Of a stretch of DNA of 64,000 nt, positions 20,963 through 25,406 are shown one piece after another. The notes beneath the pieces are model-generated. The model did not search any database and had not been told where the DNA came from. It saw nothing but the letters and a program-made list of their open reading frames with translations. The DNA lies in the IMG/VR virus record IMGVR_UViG_3300030503_000315, positions 151,316 to 215,315 of that record. One strand, given 5' to 3'. A program made the translations under genes and the position numbers. Numbering within the stretch: the stretch's first letter is position 1; every line of letters starts with the position of its first letter.

Positions 20963-23287
20963 ATGCTCGAGAGTCAGTTTTCCTTTAATCCTTCCTACAT
21001 TTCAGATGATAAGAATCCCTATAATCTGAAGCTCAAGAGGGACGTCAATTGGTCAACATCTAATCGGCGTCTTCTTGTCATCTTCCAAACCATTGATGGA
21101 CGAGACCTAAAGTCAGGGGAATTACTGACGGGCGATGTAGGAAAAACATTCCAACGCGTCTATAAGTATGCAAGAAAGATAGCCAACAACTACCTAGACA
21201 ATCAGACGCCTTTGTATTCTGTAGCTGTAGCGAATTTCGGCGCGTATCGTCATCTACACCTTAAGGGTAGCAGGCGTTCGGACGCAGAAGCGCAATTCGC
21301 CGAGCGTGTCCATGATCTCATAAAGAAGATCAAGCCAACGCACATCCTGGTCGCTGGCGACAACGCAATGATCGCACTATACCCTAAGATAAAGGATCCT
21401 CAATATAAGAAGGGTTGGGTCCACAAGATCAAGGTAGATGATGAAGTAGTGAAAGTAGTCTCTACCGTAGACTACTCCCGTCTTCTCGAGAAGCATGGAG
21501 TTTATGCAAATCTTCTTGGACTGTTTAGCCGCCATCTAGCGTTCTTGATGATGGGCCGCAATCCACATAATCTTTCGCAGATCAAGTTGGATGCGAGGTA
21601 CATCAAAACGATTGCAGAGTTCGATCAGTTGATGCACAAGTTCGATACGGCGACTGAGGTTGCAATCGATACGGAGACTCGCAATCTCTCTGTGCTACAC
21701 AACAAGATCTATACGATTCAGTTTGCAACAAATCACAACAAGGAAGTCGGATATGTCCTTGTTCTCGATCACCCTCAGGCGCATTGGGATTCGAAAGAAC
21801 GAAAGTATATCAAGTCGGAGTTGAGGAAACGATTCGGAGCGAAGACGGGACCAACTCTAATCACCTTCAATGGTTTCATGTTTGACCTGCACGTTATCCG
21901 GGTGGCTTTGAAGCTTCCCATCATCTGGCTAAAGGTGTGGGAGATCATGTTCGCAGAGCATTTGTTGGATGAGAACGTATCCTTGCAGAACGATATCTCA
22001 TCTACTGTGGATCAACGTTCAGGTAAGATGTCAAAGTATGGGGGCTTGAACCCCATCTTCTGCTCATATGGCAACTCGCATTATCTTGATGCAGTCTTTG
22101 GTAAGGAAGAGCGGGGATCTATCGGCGCTATCGATCCCTCGCGCAAGGATGCAGTAGAGTATATGGCAATGGATACGGTGTCTATCCTTAACATGCGGGA
22201 TCAGGAAATTGCCAGAGCAGAGCATATGGATATCGAAGGGAAGAACTACAAGCCTTTCTTTATTCGACATATGAAGCATCAGATGTCAGATGCAGCGCAT
22301 GCGATGTCACAAATGCGTCAGGATGGATCCTTCATAGATATCAAATATCTGAGCTATCTGTTGTCGAAGCAATCTCCATTGCGTCAGGAACTAAAACGCG
22401 TTGAGAAGCAGATGTTTGAGTGGAAAGAAGTGCAGCAAGCCAATAAAGAACTTCTAGGAACAACGGGGTTCAAGGCAGGGTCACTATTCTCCAGAGCTAT
22501 TGGGACGGCAACGAATTGGATCTTCAAGCTGAGTAAGCCAGACCATAAGAAGAAGTTGTTTATAGATATCATGGAACTTGAACCCGTCAACAAGACGGCG
22601 ACAGGTGAAGATGCAATTGACAAAGACTTCATCGCCCACTACAAGGACACGAACAAAATTGTCGCTCTGTACGGGGATCACCAGGGTTTATCAAAACTTA
22701 TCTCGACCTATGTTAAGGGATGGCGTAGGATACTAACAAACAATGTCGATGCTATCACTGATCTCTGTTTACGTGCAGCGTATTTCATAGTTGATACAGG
22801 TCGACTGGGATCCAATAAGCCGAACCTTCAACAGATTCCATCGCGTGGAAAGTCAGCCAAGTCTATAAAACGTTCATTCGTAGCTGAGCCCGGTCGCATT
22901 CCAATCCAGTTCGACTATTCAGCACACGAAGTGCGAATGTGGTCTGTTGCATCAAACGATTTGAATCTTGCAGCGGTGTTCAAGATAGGCCAGAAGCTAA
23001 GGAAGATGTATGTTAAAAATCCTACAGACGAACTCAAGGCGCGTATCAAAACGGAAGGAGACGTACACATTCTTAACGTTAAACGAATCTTCGGTAAGAT
23101 CGTTGACAAGGCGCACCCGCTCCGATACGCGATCAAGGCGGTTATCTTTGGCCTTATCTACGGAAAAAGTGCGAAGTCGCTAGGTGAAGATACAAAGCAG
23201 GCAGAGATCGAAGAAGTTAGAGAGAAGCTCTCGGAACTATACAACGAGAAGCTAGATCTTCAGGCAGCTCTAAAGAAGGCAGCATGA
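20963..23287 (+). CDS. Family A DNA polymerase, N-terminal part (UDG-like domain, 3'-5' exonuclease, motifs A and B)
   Basis: AIDTET; TGRLGSNKPNLQQIP; FDYSAHEVR; RYAIKAVIFGLIYG. Confidence 0.92.
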   Translation: MLESQFSFNPSYISDDKNPYNLKLKRDVNWSTSNRRLLVIFQTIDGRDLKSGELLTGDVGKTFQRVYKYARKIANNYLDNQTPLYSVAVANFGAYRHLHLKGSRRSDAEAQFAERVHDLIKKIKPTHILVAGDNAMIALYPKIKDPQYKKGWVHKIKVDDEVVKVVSTVDYSRLLEKHGVYANLLGLFSRHLAFLMMGRNPHNLSQIKLDARYIKTIAEFDQLMHKFDTATEVAIDTETRNLSVLHNKIYTIQFATNHNKEVGYVLVLDHPQAHWDSKERKYIKSELRKRFGAKTGPTLITFNGFMFDLHVIRVALKLPIIWLKVWEIMFAEHLLDENVSLQNDISSTVDQRSGKMSKYGGLNPIFCSYGNSHYLDAVFGKEERGSIGAIDPSRKDAVEYMAMDTVSILNMRDQEIARAEHMDIEGKNYKPFFIRHMKHQMSDAAHAMSQMRQDGSFIDIKYLSYLLSKQSPLRQELKRVEKQMFEWKEVQQANKELLGTTGFKAGSLFSRAIGTATNWIFKLSKPDHKKKLFIDIMELEPVNKTATGEDAIDKDFIAHYKDTNKIVALYGDHQGLSKLISTYVKGWRRILTNNVDAITDLCLRAAYFIVDTGRLGSNKPNLQQIPSRGKSAKSIKRSFVAEPGRIPIQFDYSAHEVRMWSVASNDLNLAAVFKIGQKLRKMYVKNPTDELKARIKTEGDVHILNVKRIFGKIVDKAHPLRYAIKAVIFGLIYGKSAKSLGEDTKQAEIEEVREKLSELYNEKLDLQAALKKAA

Positions 23288-23288
23288 T

Positions 23289-24206
23289 ATGGCTGAAGTA
23301 AAAGAACGCGAATTACCGAAAACGAGAATAGACATAAAGAAGAGGATCGCACATATCGATGCAGAGATGCATAAACTGGACTCAAGGCTGAACGTATTGT
23401 ATGGAGAGAACAGATCTGACTATGCTCAAGGCATAATGGACAAAATCTTCAAAGAGTTTGGCAAGGGAAAAAGTTGGCTGGATAGGATGCGTTCGAATGT
23501 AGCTGAGCATCTTCATTCCTACTCACCGAATGGTCGCGTTCGACATCTCTATGGTTATCTCTATACAGACAGAGAGTGTCAAGGTACGCAGGAACGTCGA
23601 GGCATCAATGCACCTATTCAGGGTTTTGCATCTGAGGTAGGCGTTAAGGCTGACAGGTTGATTGTCGAGTCTTACTATCGTGAGCTTCCAAAGTTGAAGA
23701 AGATGTTGGGTATCGTAGAATCTACGTGGGCCAAGTTTCGATTGAAATGTAGTCGCGCAGTTCACGATGCACTGTACAAACAAATCCCGTATGAATTTGT
23801 TATCCCATTCATCCACATTCTTCAGTATCAGGCAACGTACGGTGTCGCTCGAGCGTACGAGAAAGCGTTTGGAATTAGATTTACAGTGGAACCTGAAATA
23901 GAAATAGGTATTGGTGCATCTTCTGACAATGAATCAGATTGGGATTGGTCGATGTCAGATCTTGTTCGCATCATTGTCAAGACAGTAGAGGATATCGACA
24001 AGGTTGGTCAGTTGGTAGGTACTAAGAAGGAAGTGTTGGATAAGATCTTCGAGCCTTGGAGGAACAAGGAAGTACGGGACTACCTTCAAGCAAAATACCC
24101 AATTCTGGGAGTCAAGGATCTGGACGATCAGATTGAGATTGCGCTCAAGGTTCTGAAAAAGATGCAAATTGAAATGAAGAAGAAAGATGCAACCGATTCC
24201 AATTGA
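23289..24206 (+). CDS. Family A DNA polymerase, C-terminal part (motif C)
   Basis: ERRGINAPIQGFAS and RAVHDAL. Confidence 0.9.
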   Translation: MAEVKERELPKTRIDIKKRIAHIDAEMHKLDSRLNVLYGENRSDYAQGIMDKIFKEFGKGKSWLDRMRSNVAEHLHSYSPNGRVRHLYGYLYTDRECQGTQERRGINAPIQGFASEVGVKADRLIVESYYRELPKLKKMLGIVESTWAKFRLKCSRAVHDALYKQIPYEFVIPFIHILQYQATYGVARAYEKAFGIRFTVEPEIEIGIGASSDNESDWDWSMSDLVRIIVKTVEDIDKVGQLVGTKKEVLDKIFEPWRNKEVRDYLQAKYPILGVKDLDDQIEIALKVLKKMQIEMKKKDATDSN

Positions 24207-24663
24207 TCTGGTTATCGACCCAGACGAAGATGAGGACGATGAGTACGAGGAACCTCAGCAGATAGAAAGTGGAGAAAATGTTGTCTCCAAGAGGTTCGAC
24301 ATAAATAAAATCGGTCCACTTGATTACCTGCTATTAGACTTGCAGGCCGAAGGTGGTCCACTGGTGCATTGGCTATACCTGGTTGCTATCGAGAACAAAT
24401 GGTGCAATTGGCAAGTCATTTTGTCTGCATTTGATCCTTCATTGCAGACAGGTAGCATACCGATGCTTGGTCGAGAGATATGGAGTACATTCCTCTACTC
24501 CGACATGGAAGGGTTGGTTCGTCTTTGTCCACGTATAATTTCATTGCTCGAATCACTCGACGTGAATTATCCGGTCGAGTTGACATATACGTTCGGCGGA
24601 CAAGCCAACCCTCCACCTTTTCAGGCAAGCAAAAAGAAACAGGTGGAGGCTACAAACCCCTAG
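24187..24663 (+). CDS. Hypothetical protein
   Basis: ORF track. Confidence 0.7.
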   Translation: MQPIPIDLVIDPDEDEDDEYEEPQQIESGENVVSKRFDINKIGPLDYLLLDLQAEGGPLVHWLYLVAIENKWCNWQVILSAFDPSLQTGSIPMLGREIWSTFLYSDMEGLVRLCPRIISLLESLDVNYPVELTYTFGGQANPPPFQASKKKQVEATNP

Positions 24664-24671
24664 AGGTTACA

Positions 24672-25406
24672 GTGTCTCACATCTACGGCTCCTTGTGCAT
24701 CTCAGCAACAACGCCTCAGCAACAATTCCCACAGTTCAATGATATTGGTACGCGCTATAACGGTTCCCATACGCCTCATCGCTTTAGAGGTCAGTATCAT
24801 ATAGCTCGAGAAGGTGAGGATCATGTGGTCAGCACAACACATATCCCTCAGCGCTCAAAGTCTTTTCTTATCACTACATCGTCTGTTACCGACTTTGCTG
24901 AAAAGGCAAACCAGAAAATGATCGAATGGCTACCAGTCATGGAATCTGAGTACGAAGATGCACGTCAGCTGTACAAGTTTAACGAGATACAGAAGCGCCT
25001 GAAGGATTTGCCCGGCGCTCAACCCTTTACAGCCACAATCGTAAATACAGGTGAGCACGGACACTTTGGAATTCTCTCACAGTGGAAGGACGTCTATACG
25101 TACGGAGTTTACGACACACAAAACTTCGGCGTTCGATTTGTCTGGACCACGGATGAATGGTTCATGAATGATGTCAAGGCTGTTGACTTTACGCGGTATG
25201 TGTTTTATCGGTTCCCTACATTGCAGGATCGTCCCTTGTTTATCTATAGTCAAGCCGTGTGTTCTAAATGGTTTGGCTGGATGAAGATCTTCAAGGGGCA
25301 GCCCGATTGCATTCTTCGGGCATTTTGTAGTCTGGAGAATTATCTTTTCAAAGAAGCTGAGTTGAGGAATCTTCAGGTTAGCCATGCCAATCGACCCGCT
25401 TACTAA
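24672..25406 (+). CDS. Hypothetical protein (degenerate glutamine amidotransferase-like fold possible)
   Basis: GTG start after GAGG inferred. Confidence 0.65.
   Translation: MSHIYGSLCISATTPQQQFPQFNDIGTRYNGSHTPHRFRGQYHIAREGEDHVVSTTHIPQRSKSFLITTSSVTDFAEKANQKMIEWLPVMESEYEDARQLYKFNEIQKRLKDLPGAQPFTATIVNTGEHGHFGILSQWKDVYTYGVYDTQNFGVRFVWTTDEWFMNDVKAVDFTRYVFYRFPTLQDRPLFIYSQAVCSKWFGWMKIFKGQPDCILRAFCSLENYLFKEAELRNLQVSHANRPAY

What the first reader, a model, noticed from the sequence alone, without database searches (positions are those of the whole stretch)
23160..23410. Family A polymerase split between motifs B and C, with helical extensions at both new ends
Seen in sequence: TGA-T-ATG with GAAGG upstream, and no intron or intein motifs. 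Part 1 ends EIEEVREKLSELYNEKLDLQAALKKAA and part 2 starts with ...IKKRIAHIDAEMHKLDSRLNVL. Both are heptad-like and absent from canonical PolA. Inference: a heterodimeric polymerase zipped together by an acidic/basic coiled coil in the fingers domain. It also has an N-terminal UDG-like domain.
Basis: partly seen in the sequence, partly recalled or inferred. Interest (0 to 1): 0.6.

Follow-up and report, generated by a model that had tools for sequence, protein, structure and literature searches.

The report
Phage DNA polymerase in two genes
A giant phage from peat encodes its replicative family A DNA polymerase as two adjacent genes, cut at the tip of a helical hairpin where close relatives carry a homing endonuclease gene; this is a real variant of the known "gene in pieces" pattern, not a sequencing error.

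Summary
Part 1 (window 20963-23287, 774 aa) ends at TGA. One base later part 2 (23289-24206, 305 aa) starts at ATG, with GAAGG 9 nt upstream. The Pfam PolA profile runs 29-232 in part 1 and 233-308 in part 2. Motifs A and B lie in part 1 and motif C in part 2.

It is not an indel error. Contigs from two other peat samples bridge the junction unchanged. Three relatives (70-85% identical) split after the same residues with different junction DNA. Both halves show strong purifying selection.

The two helices are not new. phiRSL1, BcepSaruman and about 90 metagenomic relatives carry them in one ORF as a hairpin (20-aa helix, 3-aa loop, 23-aa helix) after motif B. The cut is at the hairpin tip, and split forms have longer helices.

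In the nearest relative, and in a second lineage, a 507-518 aa homing endonuclease gene sits exactly between the halves. The body tree needs 6-7 changes of the split state.

Complex prediction supports an obligate heterodimer (0.83, best control 0.00). The halves share the palm sheet and pair the two helices. Acid/base pairing is weak. The N-terminal UDG fold is confirmed.

The closest precedent is the split PolB gene 43A/43B of Aeromonas phages.

The parts
20963..23287 (+). PolA part 1 gene (774 aa): UDG-fold domain, 3'-5' exonuclease, thumb, palm motif A, fingers motif B, hairpin helix 1
   Evidence: ORF and translation. PF00476 E 8e-31 and PF01612 E 2e-6. PHROG 17 DNA polymerase 4e-65. 54% identical to the phiRSL1 DNA polymerase I.
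20963..21607 (+). N-terminal UDG-fold domain (residues 1-215)
   Evidence: AlphaFold2 model, pLDDT 93.4. Foldseek matches UdgX and family 4 UDGs at E 4e-8 to 5e-6, TM 0.5-0.58, and also matches the phiLo PolA 9qhs. No Pfam or NCBIfam UDG hit by sequence.
21596..22198 (+). 3'-5' exonuclease domain (residues 212-412), with invariant D236 T237 E238
   Evidence: PF01612 at 28.1 bits, above the 23.6 cut-off. Invariant columns in A4.
22913..22930 (+). Polymerase motif A (D651 Y S A H E656)
   Evidence: Invariant columns in the alignment of 49 homologues.
23123..23164 (+). Polymerase motif B / O-helix (R721...K725...F729 G730..Y733 G734)
   Evidence: Invariant columns. The Pfam profile match ends just after it.
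23198..23284 (+). Hairpin helix 1, C-terminal tail of part 1 (residues 746-774)
   Evidence: Homologous to helix 1 of the fused hairpin. Predicted interface residues 748-774 recur every 3-4 positions. pN 0.06-0.13 against pS 0.53-0.88.
23272..23291 (+). Coupling junction: purine-rich SD-like AAAGAAGG (inside the Lys-Lys-Ala codons), stop TGA 23285-23287, spacer T, ATG 23289-23291
   Evidence: Read directly. The same layout, with different bases and frame offsets, occurs in L012 (TAA C ATG), L006 (TAATG), L014 and L010.
23289..24206 (+). PolA part 2 gene (305 aa): hairpin helix 2, rest of the fingers, palm motif C, C-terminal domain
   Evidence: ORF. PF00476 profile 233-308. 54% identical to the C-terminal part of the phiRSL1 polymerase. 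76 homologues of similar size, 33 of which start inside helix 2.
23301..23411 (+). Hairpin helix 2, N-terminal part of part 2 (about residues 5-41)
   Evidence: Aligns to helix 2 of fused relatives from residue 17 on. Interface residues 9-38 recur every 3-4 positions.
23760..23771 (+). Polymerase motif C (V158 H159 D160 A161)
   Evidence: Invariant V158 H159 D160 in 44 part 2 homologues.

Best explanation
This is a genuine two-gene, two-subunit family A replicative DNA polymerase of an uncultivated phiRSL1-like jumbo phage from peat. The ancestral single-chain enzyme carried a roughly 50-residue antiparallel helical hairpin in the fingers, between the O1 helix after motif B and the next helix. 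The gene was cut at the 3-residue tip of that hairpin. Part 1 supplies the UDG-fold domain, the exonuclease, the thumb, motif A, motif B and helix 1. Part 2 supplies helix 2, the rest of the fingers, motif C and the C-terminal domain. The two catalytic aspartates therefore sit on different polypeptides, and neither half can polymerise alone. I infer that the halves are made in step by translational coupling, because the stop, one base, the ATG and an SD lie inside the last codons of part 1. I also infer that they reassemble into the normal PolA fold, helped by the lengthened two-helix antiparallel coiled coil. The cut site is a landing site of a free-standing homing endonuclease (Vsr/DUF559-type nuclease with DUF723 zinc-ribbon repeats). 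That gene lies exactly between the halves in the nearest relative and in a second lineage. The window carries the endonuclease-free split allele. Either the endonuclease made the cut and was later lost, or it invades an already split gene. Shown here: the split is real, conserved, under purifying selection and recurrent, and the endonuclease occupies the same site. Inferred: assembly, activity, coupling and the order of events.
For: Clean division of the Pfam profile, with motifs shared between the halves. The closest named relatives are single ORFs of 1050-1075 aa that contain both helices. The fused model shows helix 745-764, a 3-aa loop and helix 768-790 at pLDDT 82-87. Relatives L006, L012 and L015 split after the same residues, but with the junctions TAATG, TAA-C-ATG and a 1.5-kb insert, so the frame offset differs. 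Independent assemblies bridge the junction without an indel. pN is 0.09-0.19 against pS 0.70-0.90 for both halves. Sixteen split part 1 clusters were found among 120 listed homologues, and 33 part 2 clusters start inside helix 2. Residues between motif B and the next helix number 73-90 in ten split pairs, against 49-65 (one 72) in fused forms. The inserted ORF matches PHROG 559 'HNH endonuclease' at 3e-97 and PHROG 3339 'homing endonuclease' at 3e-86, and Pfam DUF723, DUF559 and Mom. The two copies, in different PolA lineages, are 52% identical. Complex prediction gives ipSAE 0.83 (three runs 0.82-0.83) against a best control of 0.00. That mark was reached by 58 of 80 solved complexes and 2 of 110 mismatched pairs. 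The runs agree in at least 93% of contacts and the partner's pLDDT is at least 84. Published precedent for endonuclease-associated split phage enzymes that remain active: PMC2988022.
Against: There are no protein, RNA or activity data. No RNA runs and no raw reads were found. The complex score may partly reflect the model's memory of single-chain PolA folds, and my own alignments were used, so it shows fold compatibility and not binding. In the window clade only one of four members carries the endonuclease, and it is nested within the clade. Parsimony there favours invasion of an already split gene over causation. Other split lineages have unrelated small ORFs, or nothing, between the halves. 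The window genome has no copy of the endonuclease.
Confidence: 0.8

Rival explanations
1. The split is a sequencing or assembly indel in a metagenomic contig, and the real gene is one ORF.
For: The window is an uncultivated IMG/VR contig. The two frames differ by one base, and a single indel within 23274-23285 would fuse them.
Against: The same split after the same residues occurs in L006, L012 and L015, from other samples at 70-85% identity. Their junction bases and frame offsets differ, and one has a 1.5-kb gene in between. Contigs from two other peat samples bridge the junction unchanged. The identical 774-aa protein was called on 11 contigs. Each part 2 has its own ATG and SD.
Confidence: 0.02
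2. Programmed +1 ribosomal frameshifting, or bypassing at the TGA, yields a single fused polymerase, as in prfB.
For: Part 2 is in the +1 frame. An SD-like GAAGG lies a few bases upstream of the stop, which loosely resembles the prfB layout.
Against: GCA-TGA-T is not a slippery site. This follows from established knowledge of +1 shift sites such as CUU-UGA-C. Relatives have -1 offsets, 8-nt overlaps or whole genes between the halves. There is no Rfam hit, and the junction RNA is no more structured than shuffles. An ATG with a conserved Met-Ala/Ser-Glu start is present in relatives.
Confidence: 0.02
3. The polymerase is a decaying pseudogene, and the phage replicates with another enzyme.
For: A stop codon interrupts an otherwise continuous family. 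Motif C reads HDA and not HDE.
Against: Synonymous sites are near saturation while pN is 0.09-0.19 in both halves across split relatives. All catalytic motifs are invariant, and HDA is shared by the fused family members. The split form recurs in dozens of clusters.
Confidence: 0.03
4. The split is adaptive in itself. Two subunits could allow regulated assembly, or an extra role for one half, for example part 1 acting as a stand-alone exonuclease/UDG-like factor. The recurrence would then reflect selection and not mobile-element scars.
For: The body tree needs 6-7 changes of state, and the AU test rejects a single split clade (p 4e-5). The helices are longer in every split lineage examined. Most split loci have no endonuclease.
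Against: The tight stop-start coupling suggests equimolar co-synthesis and not independent regulation. Unrelated genes are inserted at the same point, which fits a permissive insertion site. The same family also shows endonuclease-type breaks at motif B and at the TGR...PNLQ motif.
Confidence: 0.15

Closest known systems
Split family B DNA polymerase genes 43A/43B of Aeromonas phages 25 and 44RR (T4-related), as reviewed in PMC2988022
   Same: An essential replicative polymerase, contiguous in relatives, is encoded as two adjacent cistrons. A free-standing homing endonuclease occupies the gap in one phage but not in its relative. The order of events (cut by the endonuclease, or invasion of an already split gene) is ambiguous. 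The halves are reported there to co-purify and to be active.
   Different: That case is family B and this one is family A. Here the cut lies in the fingers, at the tip of a helical hairpin between motifs B and C. The halves here abut (1 nt) with no untranslated spacer. Here the state is scattered over at least 6 places on the tree. There are no biochemical data here.
Phage Aeh1 nrdA split by mobE, and T4 topoisomerase genes 39/60 split by mobA ('genes in pieces')
   Same: A free-standing endonuclease gene inserted in a coding region produces two polypeptides that reassemble into a working enzyme. Stop and start overlap, suggesting coupling.
   Different: A different enzyme and a different endonuclease family (HNH Mob there, a Vsr/DUF559-type with DUF723 repeats here). 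The window itself lacks the endonuclease.
Single-chain PolA of Ralstonia phage phiRSL1, Burkholderia phages BcepSaruman/BcepSauron and BCSR5
   Same: These are orthologues: 50-54% identity, the same UDG-fold/exo/pol layout, the same hairpin after motif B, and the same neighbours with a DnaG-like primase downstream.
   Different: They are one ORF of 1050-1075 aa with a shorter hairpin (62-65 residues between motif B and the next helix, against 84 in the window).
Split PolA of T7-like cyanophage clade B (S-TIP37 type) and of MEP401-type OM43 phages
   Same: A family A polymerase encoded by two ORFs in a phage.
   Different: In the cyanophages the cut lies between the exonuclease and polymerase domains, so each half is a whole domain. 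In the OM43 phages a small unknown ORF intervenes. Neither report describes a cut inside the fingers or a coiled-coil extension.
UDG-fused phage PolAs (SPO1-like, SP15-like phiLo/YerA41, N4-like with an inactive UDG domain), PMC13697223
   Same: An N-terminal UDG-fold domain precedes the exonuclease and polymerase. The phiLo structure 9qhs is among the fold matches.
   Different: There is no sequence-level UDG match here, so catalytic status is unknown. Those enzymes are single chains whose large insertions lie elsewhere.
Engineered split T7 RNA polymerase joined by synthetic leucine zippers (from my own knowledge, not checked here)
   Same: A right-hand polymerase is cut at a surface loop, and reassembly is aided by paired helices at the new ends.
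   Different: That system is artificial, uses parallel zippers and is an RNA polymerase. Here the helices derive from a natural antiparallel hairpin.

Membership tests
Family A DNA polymerase (PF00476) | Motifs A, B and C of the palm and fingers, in the profile's order | tested here: met
   Part 1 matches profile 29-232 (107.8 bits, cut-off 34.3). Part 2 matches 233-308 (27.8 bits, below the cut-off on its own). Together they cover the profile in order. The fold of a fused homologue matches Bst and Taq Pol I at E 1e-18.
Family A DNA polymerase (PF00476) | 3'-5' proofreading exonuclease domain with the Exo I DxE motif | tested here: met
   PF01612 at 28.1 bits, above the 23.6 cut-off. D236 T237 E238 are invariant.
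Endonuclease-associated 'gene in pieces' (Aeh1 nrdA, T4-like gene 43A/43B) | The gene is contiguous in related phages | tested here: met
   phiRSL1, BcepSaruman, BCSR5, Motura and 93 metagenomic clusters are single ORFs.
Endonuclease-associated 'gene in pieces' (Aeh1 nrdA, T4-like gene 43A/43B) | A free-standing homing endonuclease gene lies at the break in some members | tested here: met
   L015 (85% identical PolA) and L016 carry a 507/518-aa endonuclease exactly between the halves.
Endonuclease-associated 'gene in pieces' (Aeh1 nrdA, T4-like gene 43A/43B) | The endonuclease is present in this genome | tested here: not met
   The halves are 1 nt apart. No match to the endonuclease was found in the 215-kb record. 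The window has the endonuclease-free split allele, like phage 44RR in the PolB case.
Endonuclease-associated 'gene in pieces' (Aeh1 nrdA, T4-like gene 43A/43B) | The halves reassemble into an active enzyme | not testable with these tools
   Only a prediction is available: ipSAE 0.83 against a best control of 0.00. Purifying selection on both halves is consistent with activity.
Split intein / protein trans-splicing | Hint-domain blocks at the new termini and a nucleophile at +1 | tested here: not met
   No Hint or intein family appears in Pfam at E up to 0.1. The new termini align to the hairpin helices of fused relatives. The part 1 tail is 29 helical residues.
Programmed ribosomal frameshift gene | A slippery site, and a frame offset conserved among relatives | tested here: not met
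   Offsets differ among relatives (+1, -1, 8-nt overlap, intervening genes). There is no RNA structure or Rfam hit.
UDG-fused phage PolA | N-terminal uracil-DNA glycosylase fold | tested here: met
   Model pLDDT 93.4. Foldseek matches UdgX and family 4 UDGs at E 4e-8, TM 0.5-0.58.
UDG-fused phage PolA | Catalytic UDG motifs A and B, hence glycosylase activity | tested here: inconclusive
   No Pfam or NCBIfam UDG hit. Identity to solved UDGs is 14-18%. I did not map the motif residues structurally.

The most novel reading that the evidence does not exclude
The tip of a fingers hairpin next to the highly conserved motif B DNA serves as a safe harbour for free-standing homing endonucleases and other small genes in phiRSL1-like jumbo phages. 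It has turned a single-chain PolA into a two-subunit enzyme several times. After each fission the hairpin helices lengthened into a heterodimerising antiparallel coiled coil. This would be a natural, repeated experiment in splitting a polymerase, and a ready-made design for split family A polymerases.
Probability: 0.45. Interest if true: 0.6.

Novelty: new variant of a known kind. Interest (0 to 1): 0.5.

Why it matters
Natural splits of replicative polymerases inside the catalytic domain are rare. The textbook case is the family B gene 43A/43B of some T4-related phages. Here the same pattern appears in family A, with the two catalytic aspartates on different chains. The cut lies at a defined structural element (a hairpin tip), and many natural fused and split pairs are available for comparison. 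That makes three questions directly testable: how a right-hand polymerase tolerates fission, whether helix lengthening compensates for the lost covalent link, and how intron-less homing endonucleases remodel essential genes. It also has a practical side. Annotation pipelines will call such halves partial or 'exonuclease', and the pair offers a natural template for split-polymerase engineering. It is an incremental finding and not a new principle.

Tried and rejected
- Indel error: rejected, because relatives share the split and independent assemblies bridge it.
- Frameshift or RNA element: no Rfam match at E up to 1 in 22700-23900, and the junction fold has z 0.42.
- Intein or intron: there is no room (1 nt) and no family hit.
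- Acid/base zipper: net charges are -2 and +1 in the window and inconsistent in five other split pairs, so this is not a general principle.
- Small ORFs between the halves in L007, L008 and L009: no Pfam or PHROG hits. Two look like small membrane proteins. They are not endonucleases.
- Endonuclease copy in the window's own 215-kb record: none found.
- Recent co-conversion between the window clade and the P0092 lineage: by eye the 40-residue tails are only about 42% identical, no higher than the body (55%), so there is no sign of a recent shared junction. The P0092 part 2 also lacks the N-terminal extension.
- Sequence-level UDG assignment of the N-terminal domain: no hit. Only the fold search worked.
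- Literature searches found no description of a PolA split at this site. The library is incomplete, so this is weak evidence of novelty.
- Raw reads and RNA evidence: only Logan contigs of DNA runs were on offer.
- The big representative search and the ESM Atlas were not used, because the family was already clear.
Full report
**What is in the sequence.** The window is part of a 215-kb IMG/VR virus record, estimated about 91% complete. At 23270-23291 the + strand reads ...AAG AAG GCA GCA TGA T ATG GCT.... The upstream ORF (20963-23287, 774 aa) ends ...ALKKAA. The downstream ORF (23289-24206, 305 aa) starts one base after the stop, in the +1 frame. The purine-rich run AAAGAAGG, made by the Lys-Lys-Ala codons of part 1, lies 9 nt before the ATG.

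The Pfam family A polymerase profile is divided cleanly: positions 29-232 fall in part 1 and 233-308 in part 2. PHROGs calls both halves DNA polymerase. Motif A (D651-E656) and motif B (R721 to G734) are in part 1, and motif C (V158 H159 D160) is in part 2. Around the cut, about 29 residues of part 1 and about 41 residues of part 2 lie outside the canonical profile.

**Is it an artefact?** No.
- A search of IMG/VR found L006 (74% identical in part 2). There part 1 ends with the same six residues, but the junction is TAATG, which gives a -1 offset.
- L012 (82% identical) has TAA-C-ATG.
- L015 (85% identical) has TGA-T-ATG followed by a 1.5-kb gene, and only then part 2.
- An indel error cannot recur at one codon with different bases and frames.
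- Logan contigs from two other peat samples (X5, X6) bridge the junction with no gap and no change there. Only contigs were available, not raw reads, and no RNA run was found.
- The exact 774-aa product is on record from 11 contigs.
- Between the window and its split relatives, synonymous sites are near saturation (pS 0.70-0.90) while pN is 0.09-0.19 in both halves. The two helix-coding stretches also show pN well below pS. Both halves have therefore been kept by selection since the split.

**What the helices are.** The closest named phages are the jumbo phages Ralstonia phiRSL1 (54%), Burkholderia BcepSaruman/BcepSauron, BCSR5, and Achromobacter Motura. All four encode the polymerase as one ORF of 1050-1075 aa. 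In phiRSL1, BcepSaruman and BCSR5 the single chain contains both helices joined by a short loop. Motura and two metagenomic relatives lack the insertion, and PaBG lacks it by the tblastn coordinates.

Among 120 listed homologues of part 1, 93 are fused, and they have 49-65 (one 72) residues between motif B and the next conserved helix. An AlphaFold2 model of a fused homologue (P0087) shows helix 745-764, a 3-residue loop and helix 768-790, at pLDDT 82-87. This hairpin sits directly after the O and O1 helices. The fold matches Bst and Taq Pol I at E about 1e-18.

What it refutes is the idea that the helices arose as dimerisation handles. It does not refute the split. The cut fell at the tip of an existing hairpin.

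In ten split pairs the helices together span 73-90 residues (84 in the window), which is longer than in any fused form seen. In the window clade the extra residues are about 6-8 at the end of part 1 and about 16 at the start of part 2.

**How common, and how often.** Sixteen part 1 clusters end 35-46 residues after motif B. Thirty-three part 2 clusters (268-314 aa, some on contigs up to 192 kb) start inside helix 2.

On a tree of the region from the N-terminus to motif B, the split state needs 7 changes. FastTree on 108 rows gives at least 5 forced by well-supported branches. An IQ-TREE quick search on 48 rows gives at least 6. The AU test rejects a single split clade (lnL difference 602, p 4e-5). 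The window clade of four split members is nested among fused forms, including phiRSL1.

Two caveats apply. These are quick trees without a root, and recombination at the junction would mimic repeated origin. Several lineages share a similar part 2 start (Met-Ala-Glu-Val...) and a similar Lys/Glu-rich end of part 1. This may mean lateral transfer of the junction, or convergence forced by SD and start-codon needs. I could not decide between these.

**The mobile-element link.** In L015, the nearest relative, a 507-aa ORF lies exactly between the halves. It starts at the ATG position that part 2 uses in the window, and its stop overlaps the part 2 ATG (TAATG). It matches PHROG 559 'HNH endonuclease' (3e-97), PHROG 3339 'homing endonuclease' (3e-86), and Pfam DUF723 (two repeats), DUF559 (Vsr-like nuclease) and Mom.

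A 518-aa homologue (52% identical) sits at the same point in L016. Its polymerase belongs to another branch, next to fused forms. Its part 2 begins right at the former loop with almost no extension. That looks like a separate and younger fission.

Other split lineages carry unrelated small ORFs between the halves: two putative membrane proteins of 82 and 93 aa, and two unknowns of 144 and 156 aa. Others carry nothing. The window record has no copy of the endonuclease.

The same polymerase family also shows breaks inside motif B and at the TGR...PNLQ motif, and in-frame AP2/HNH_3 inserts upstream of motif B. The gene is evidently a frequent target of mobile endonucleases.

In the window clade only L015 has the endonuclease. 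There, parsimony favours invasion of an already split gene, whereas L016 favours causation. The same ambiguity is discussed for the T4-related PolB gene 43 (PMC2988022).

**How it most likely works.** Complex prediction used part 1 residues 420-774 and part 2.
- The ipSAE score was 0.82-0.83 in three runs, against 0.00 for the best of three controls.
- That mark was reached by 58 of 80 solved complexes and 2 of 110 mismatched pairs.
- The runs agree in at least 93% of contacts, and the partner's pLDDT is at least 84.
- The interface has about 430 contacts.
- The most confident contacts join the motif A strand of part 1 (644-650) to the motif C strands of part 2 (162-168, 205-208), so the palm sheet is built from both chains.
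- Residues 748-774 of part 1 and 9-38 of part 2 touch with a 3-4 residue periodicity, as expected for a two-helix coiled coil. It must be antiparallel, given the hairpin topology of the fused forms.
- Because single-chain PolA structures are well known to such models, and because I supplied my own alignments, this result shows that the halves fit the fold. It does not show that they bind.

Net charges of the helices are -2 and +1 in the window and vary in sign in other split pairs, so acid/base pairing is not the principle. The stop-start arrangement, with an SD inside the last codons, recurs in all abutting relatives. I infer from this that the halves are translationally coupled and made in roughly equal amounts.

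**N-terminal domain and context.** Residues 1-215 fold with pLDDT 93 into a UDG-type fold. Foldseek matches UdgX and family 4 UDGs at E 4e-8, TM 0.5-0.58, identity 14-18%. It also matches the UDG-fused phiLo PolA structure. No sequence family matches, so activity is open. Published work distinguishes active (SPO1-like, SP15-like) from inactive (N4-like) UDG domains in phage PolAs (PMC13697223).

The neighbouring genes form a replication module: an Rv2179c-like exonuclease, a HAD phosphatase, a homologue of the gene that BcepSaruman's record calls a phosphohydrolase, the two polymerase genes, two unknown genes, and a DnaG-like primase. The order is the same as in phiRSL1 and BcepSaruman.

**Comparison and verdict.** This is a member of family A polymerases, orthologous to the phiRSL1-type enzyme. 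It is an instance of the known phage pattern of essential genes in pieces associated with free-standing homing endonucleases: Aeh1 nrdA/mobE, T4 39/60/mobA, and Aeromonas phage PolB 43A/43B.

Four things are new relative to what I could find:
- the polymerase family is A;
- the cut lies inside the fingers, between motifs B and C, at a hairpin tip;
- the helices are consistently longer in split forms;
- the split state is scattered across the tree.

Other reported PolA splits separate whole domains or have an intervening ORF of unknown nature. I rate it a new variant of a known kind. It is of moderate interest, chiefly as a natural series of fused and split polymerases.

Noticed in passing
Relatives only: P0123, P0196 with P0039, P0121, P0183 (break inside motif B); P0173, P0174, P0200 (break at the TGR...PNLQ motif); P0090, P0179, P0181, P0188, P0194 (1180-1230 aa): The same polymerase family has at least two other break points at highly conserved motifs. 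It also has in-frame inserts of about 185 aa with AP2 and HNH_3 domains upstream of motif B. These are probably further homing endonuclease or intron-type invasions.
   Followed up: partly
L007:4782-5063 and L009:4782-5030; L008:4870-5771: In three other split lineages, small unrelated ORFs sit between the polymerase halves. Two are hydrophobic proteins of 82-93 aa that look membrane-spanning, and two are unknowns of 144 and 156 aa. None has a Pfam or PHROG match.
   Followed up: partly
Part 2 starts in window 23289-23310, L015, L010, L009, P0020, P0035, P0060: Part 2 begins Met-Ala/Ser-Glu/Lys-Val in several split lineages that are far apart on the body tree, and part 1 often ends Leu-Lys/Glu-Lys-Ala. 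The cause is either lateral transfer of the junction or convergence imposed by SD and start-codon context. This is unresolved.
   Followed up: partly
window 23760-23771 (part 2 residues 158-161): Motif C reads Val-His-Asp-Ala in the window. Val-His-Asp-Ala is invariant in the 36 fused sequences aligned, whereas only Val-His-Asp is invariant in the 44 part 2 sequences. The second acidic residue of the usual His-Asp-Glu is therefore replaced.
   Followed up: no
window 20963-21607: The N-terminal UDG-fold domain has its own set of invariant residues (for example W30, P125 T126 H127, D170, N183, R190) but no sequence match to UDG families. It is open whether it excises uracil or only binds DNA.
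   Followed up: partly
L015:2978-4501 (P0205) and L016:6324-7880: The endonuclease combines DUF723 zinc-ribbon repeats, a DUF559/Vsr-like nuclease and a C-terminal Mom-like domain. This is an unusual three-part architecture for a homing endonuclease.
   Followed up: partly
window 24187-24663 and 24480-25406: The ORF after part 2 overlaps it by 20 nt and starts with a very acidic stretch. The next long ORF overlaps that one by about 180 nt in another frame, so its true start is probably further downstream. Relatives have genes of about 140 and 245 aa here. Neither has a family match.
   Followed up: no
whole window: The stretch 22300-24300 was found in Logan contigs of 24 runs, 22 of them peat metagenomes, and 17 hold at least half of its sampled words. 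The phage therefore seems widespread in that habitat. All ORFs of 300 aa or more but one lie on the + strand.
   Followed up: no
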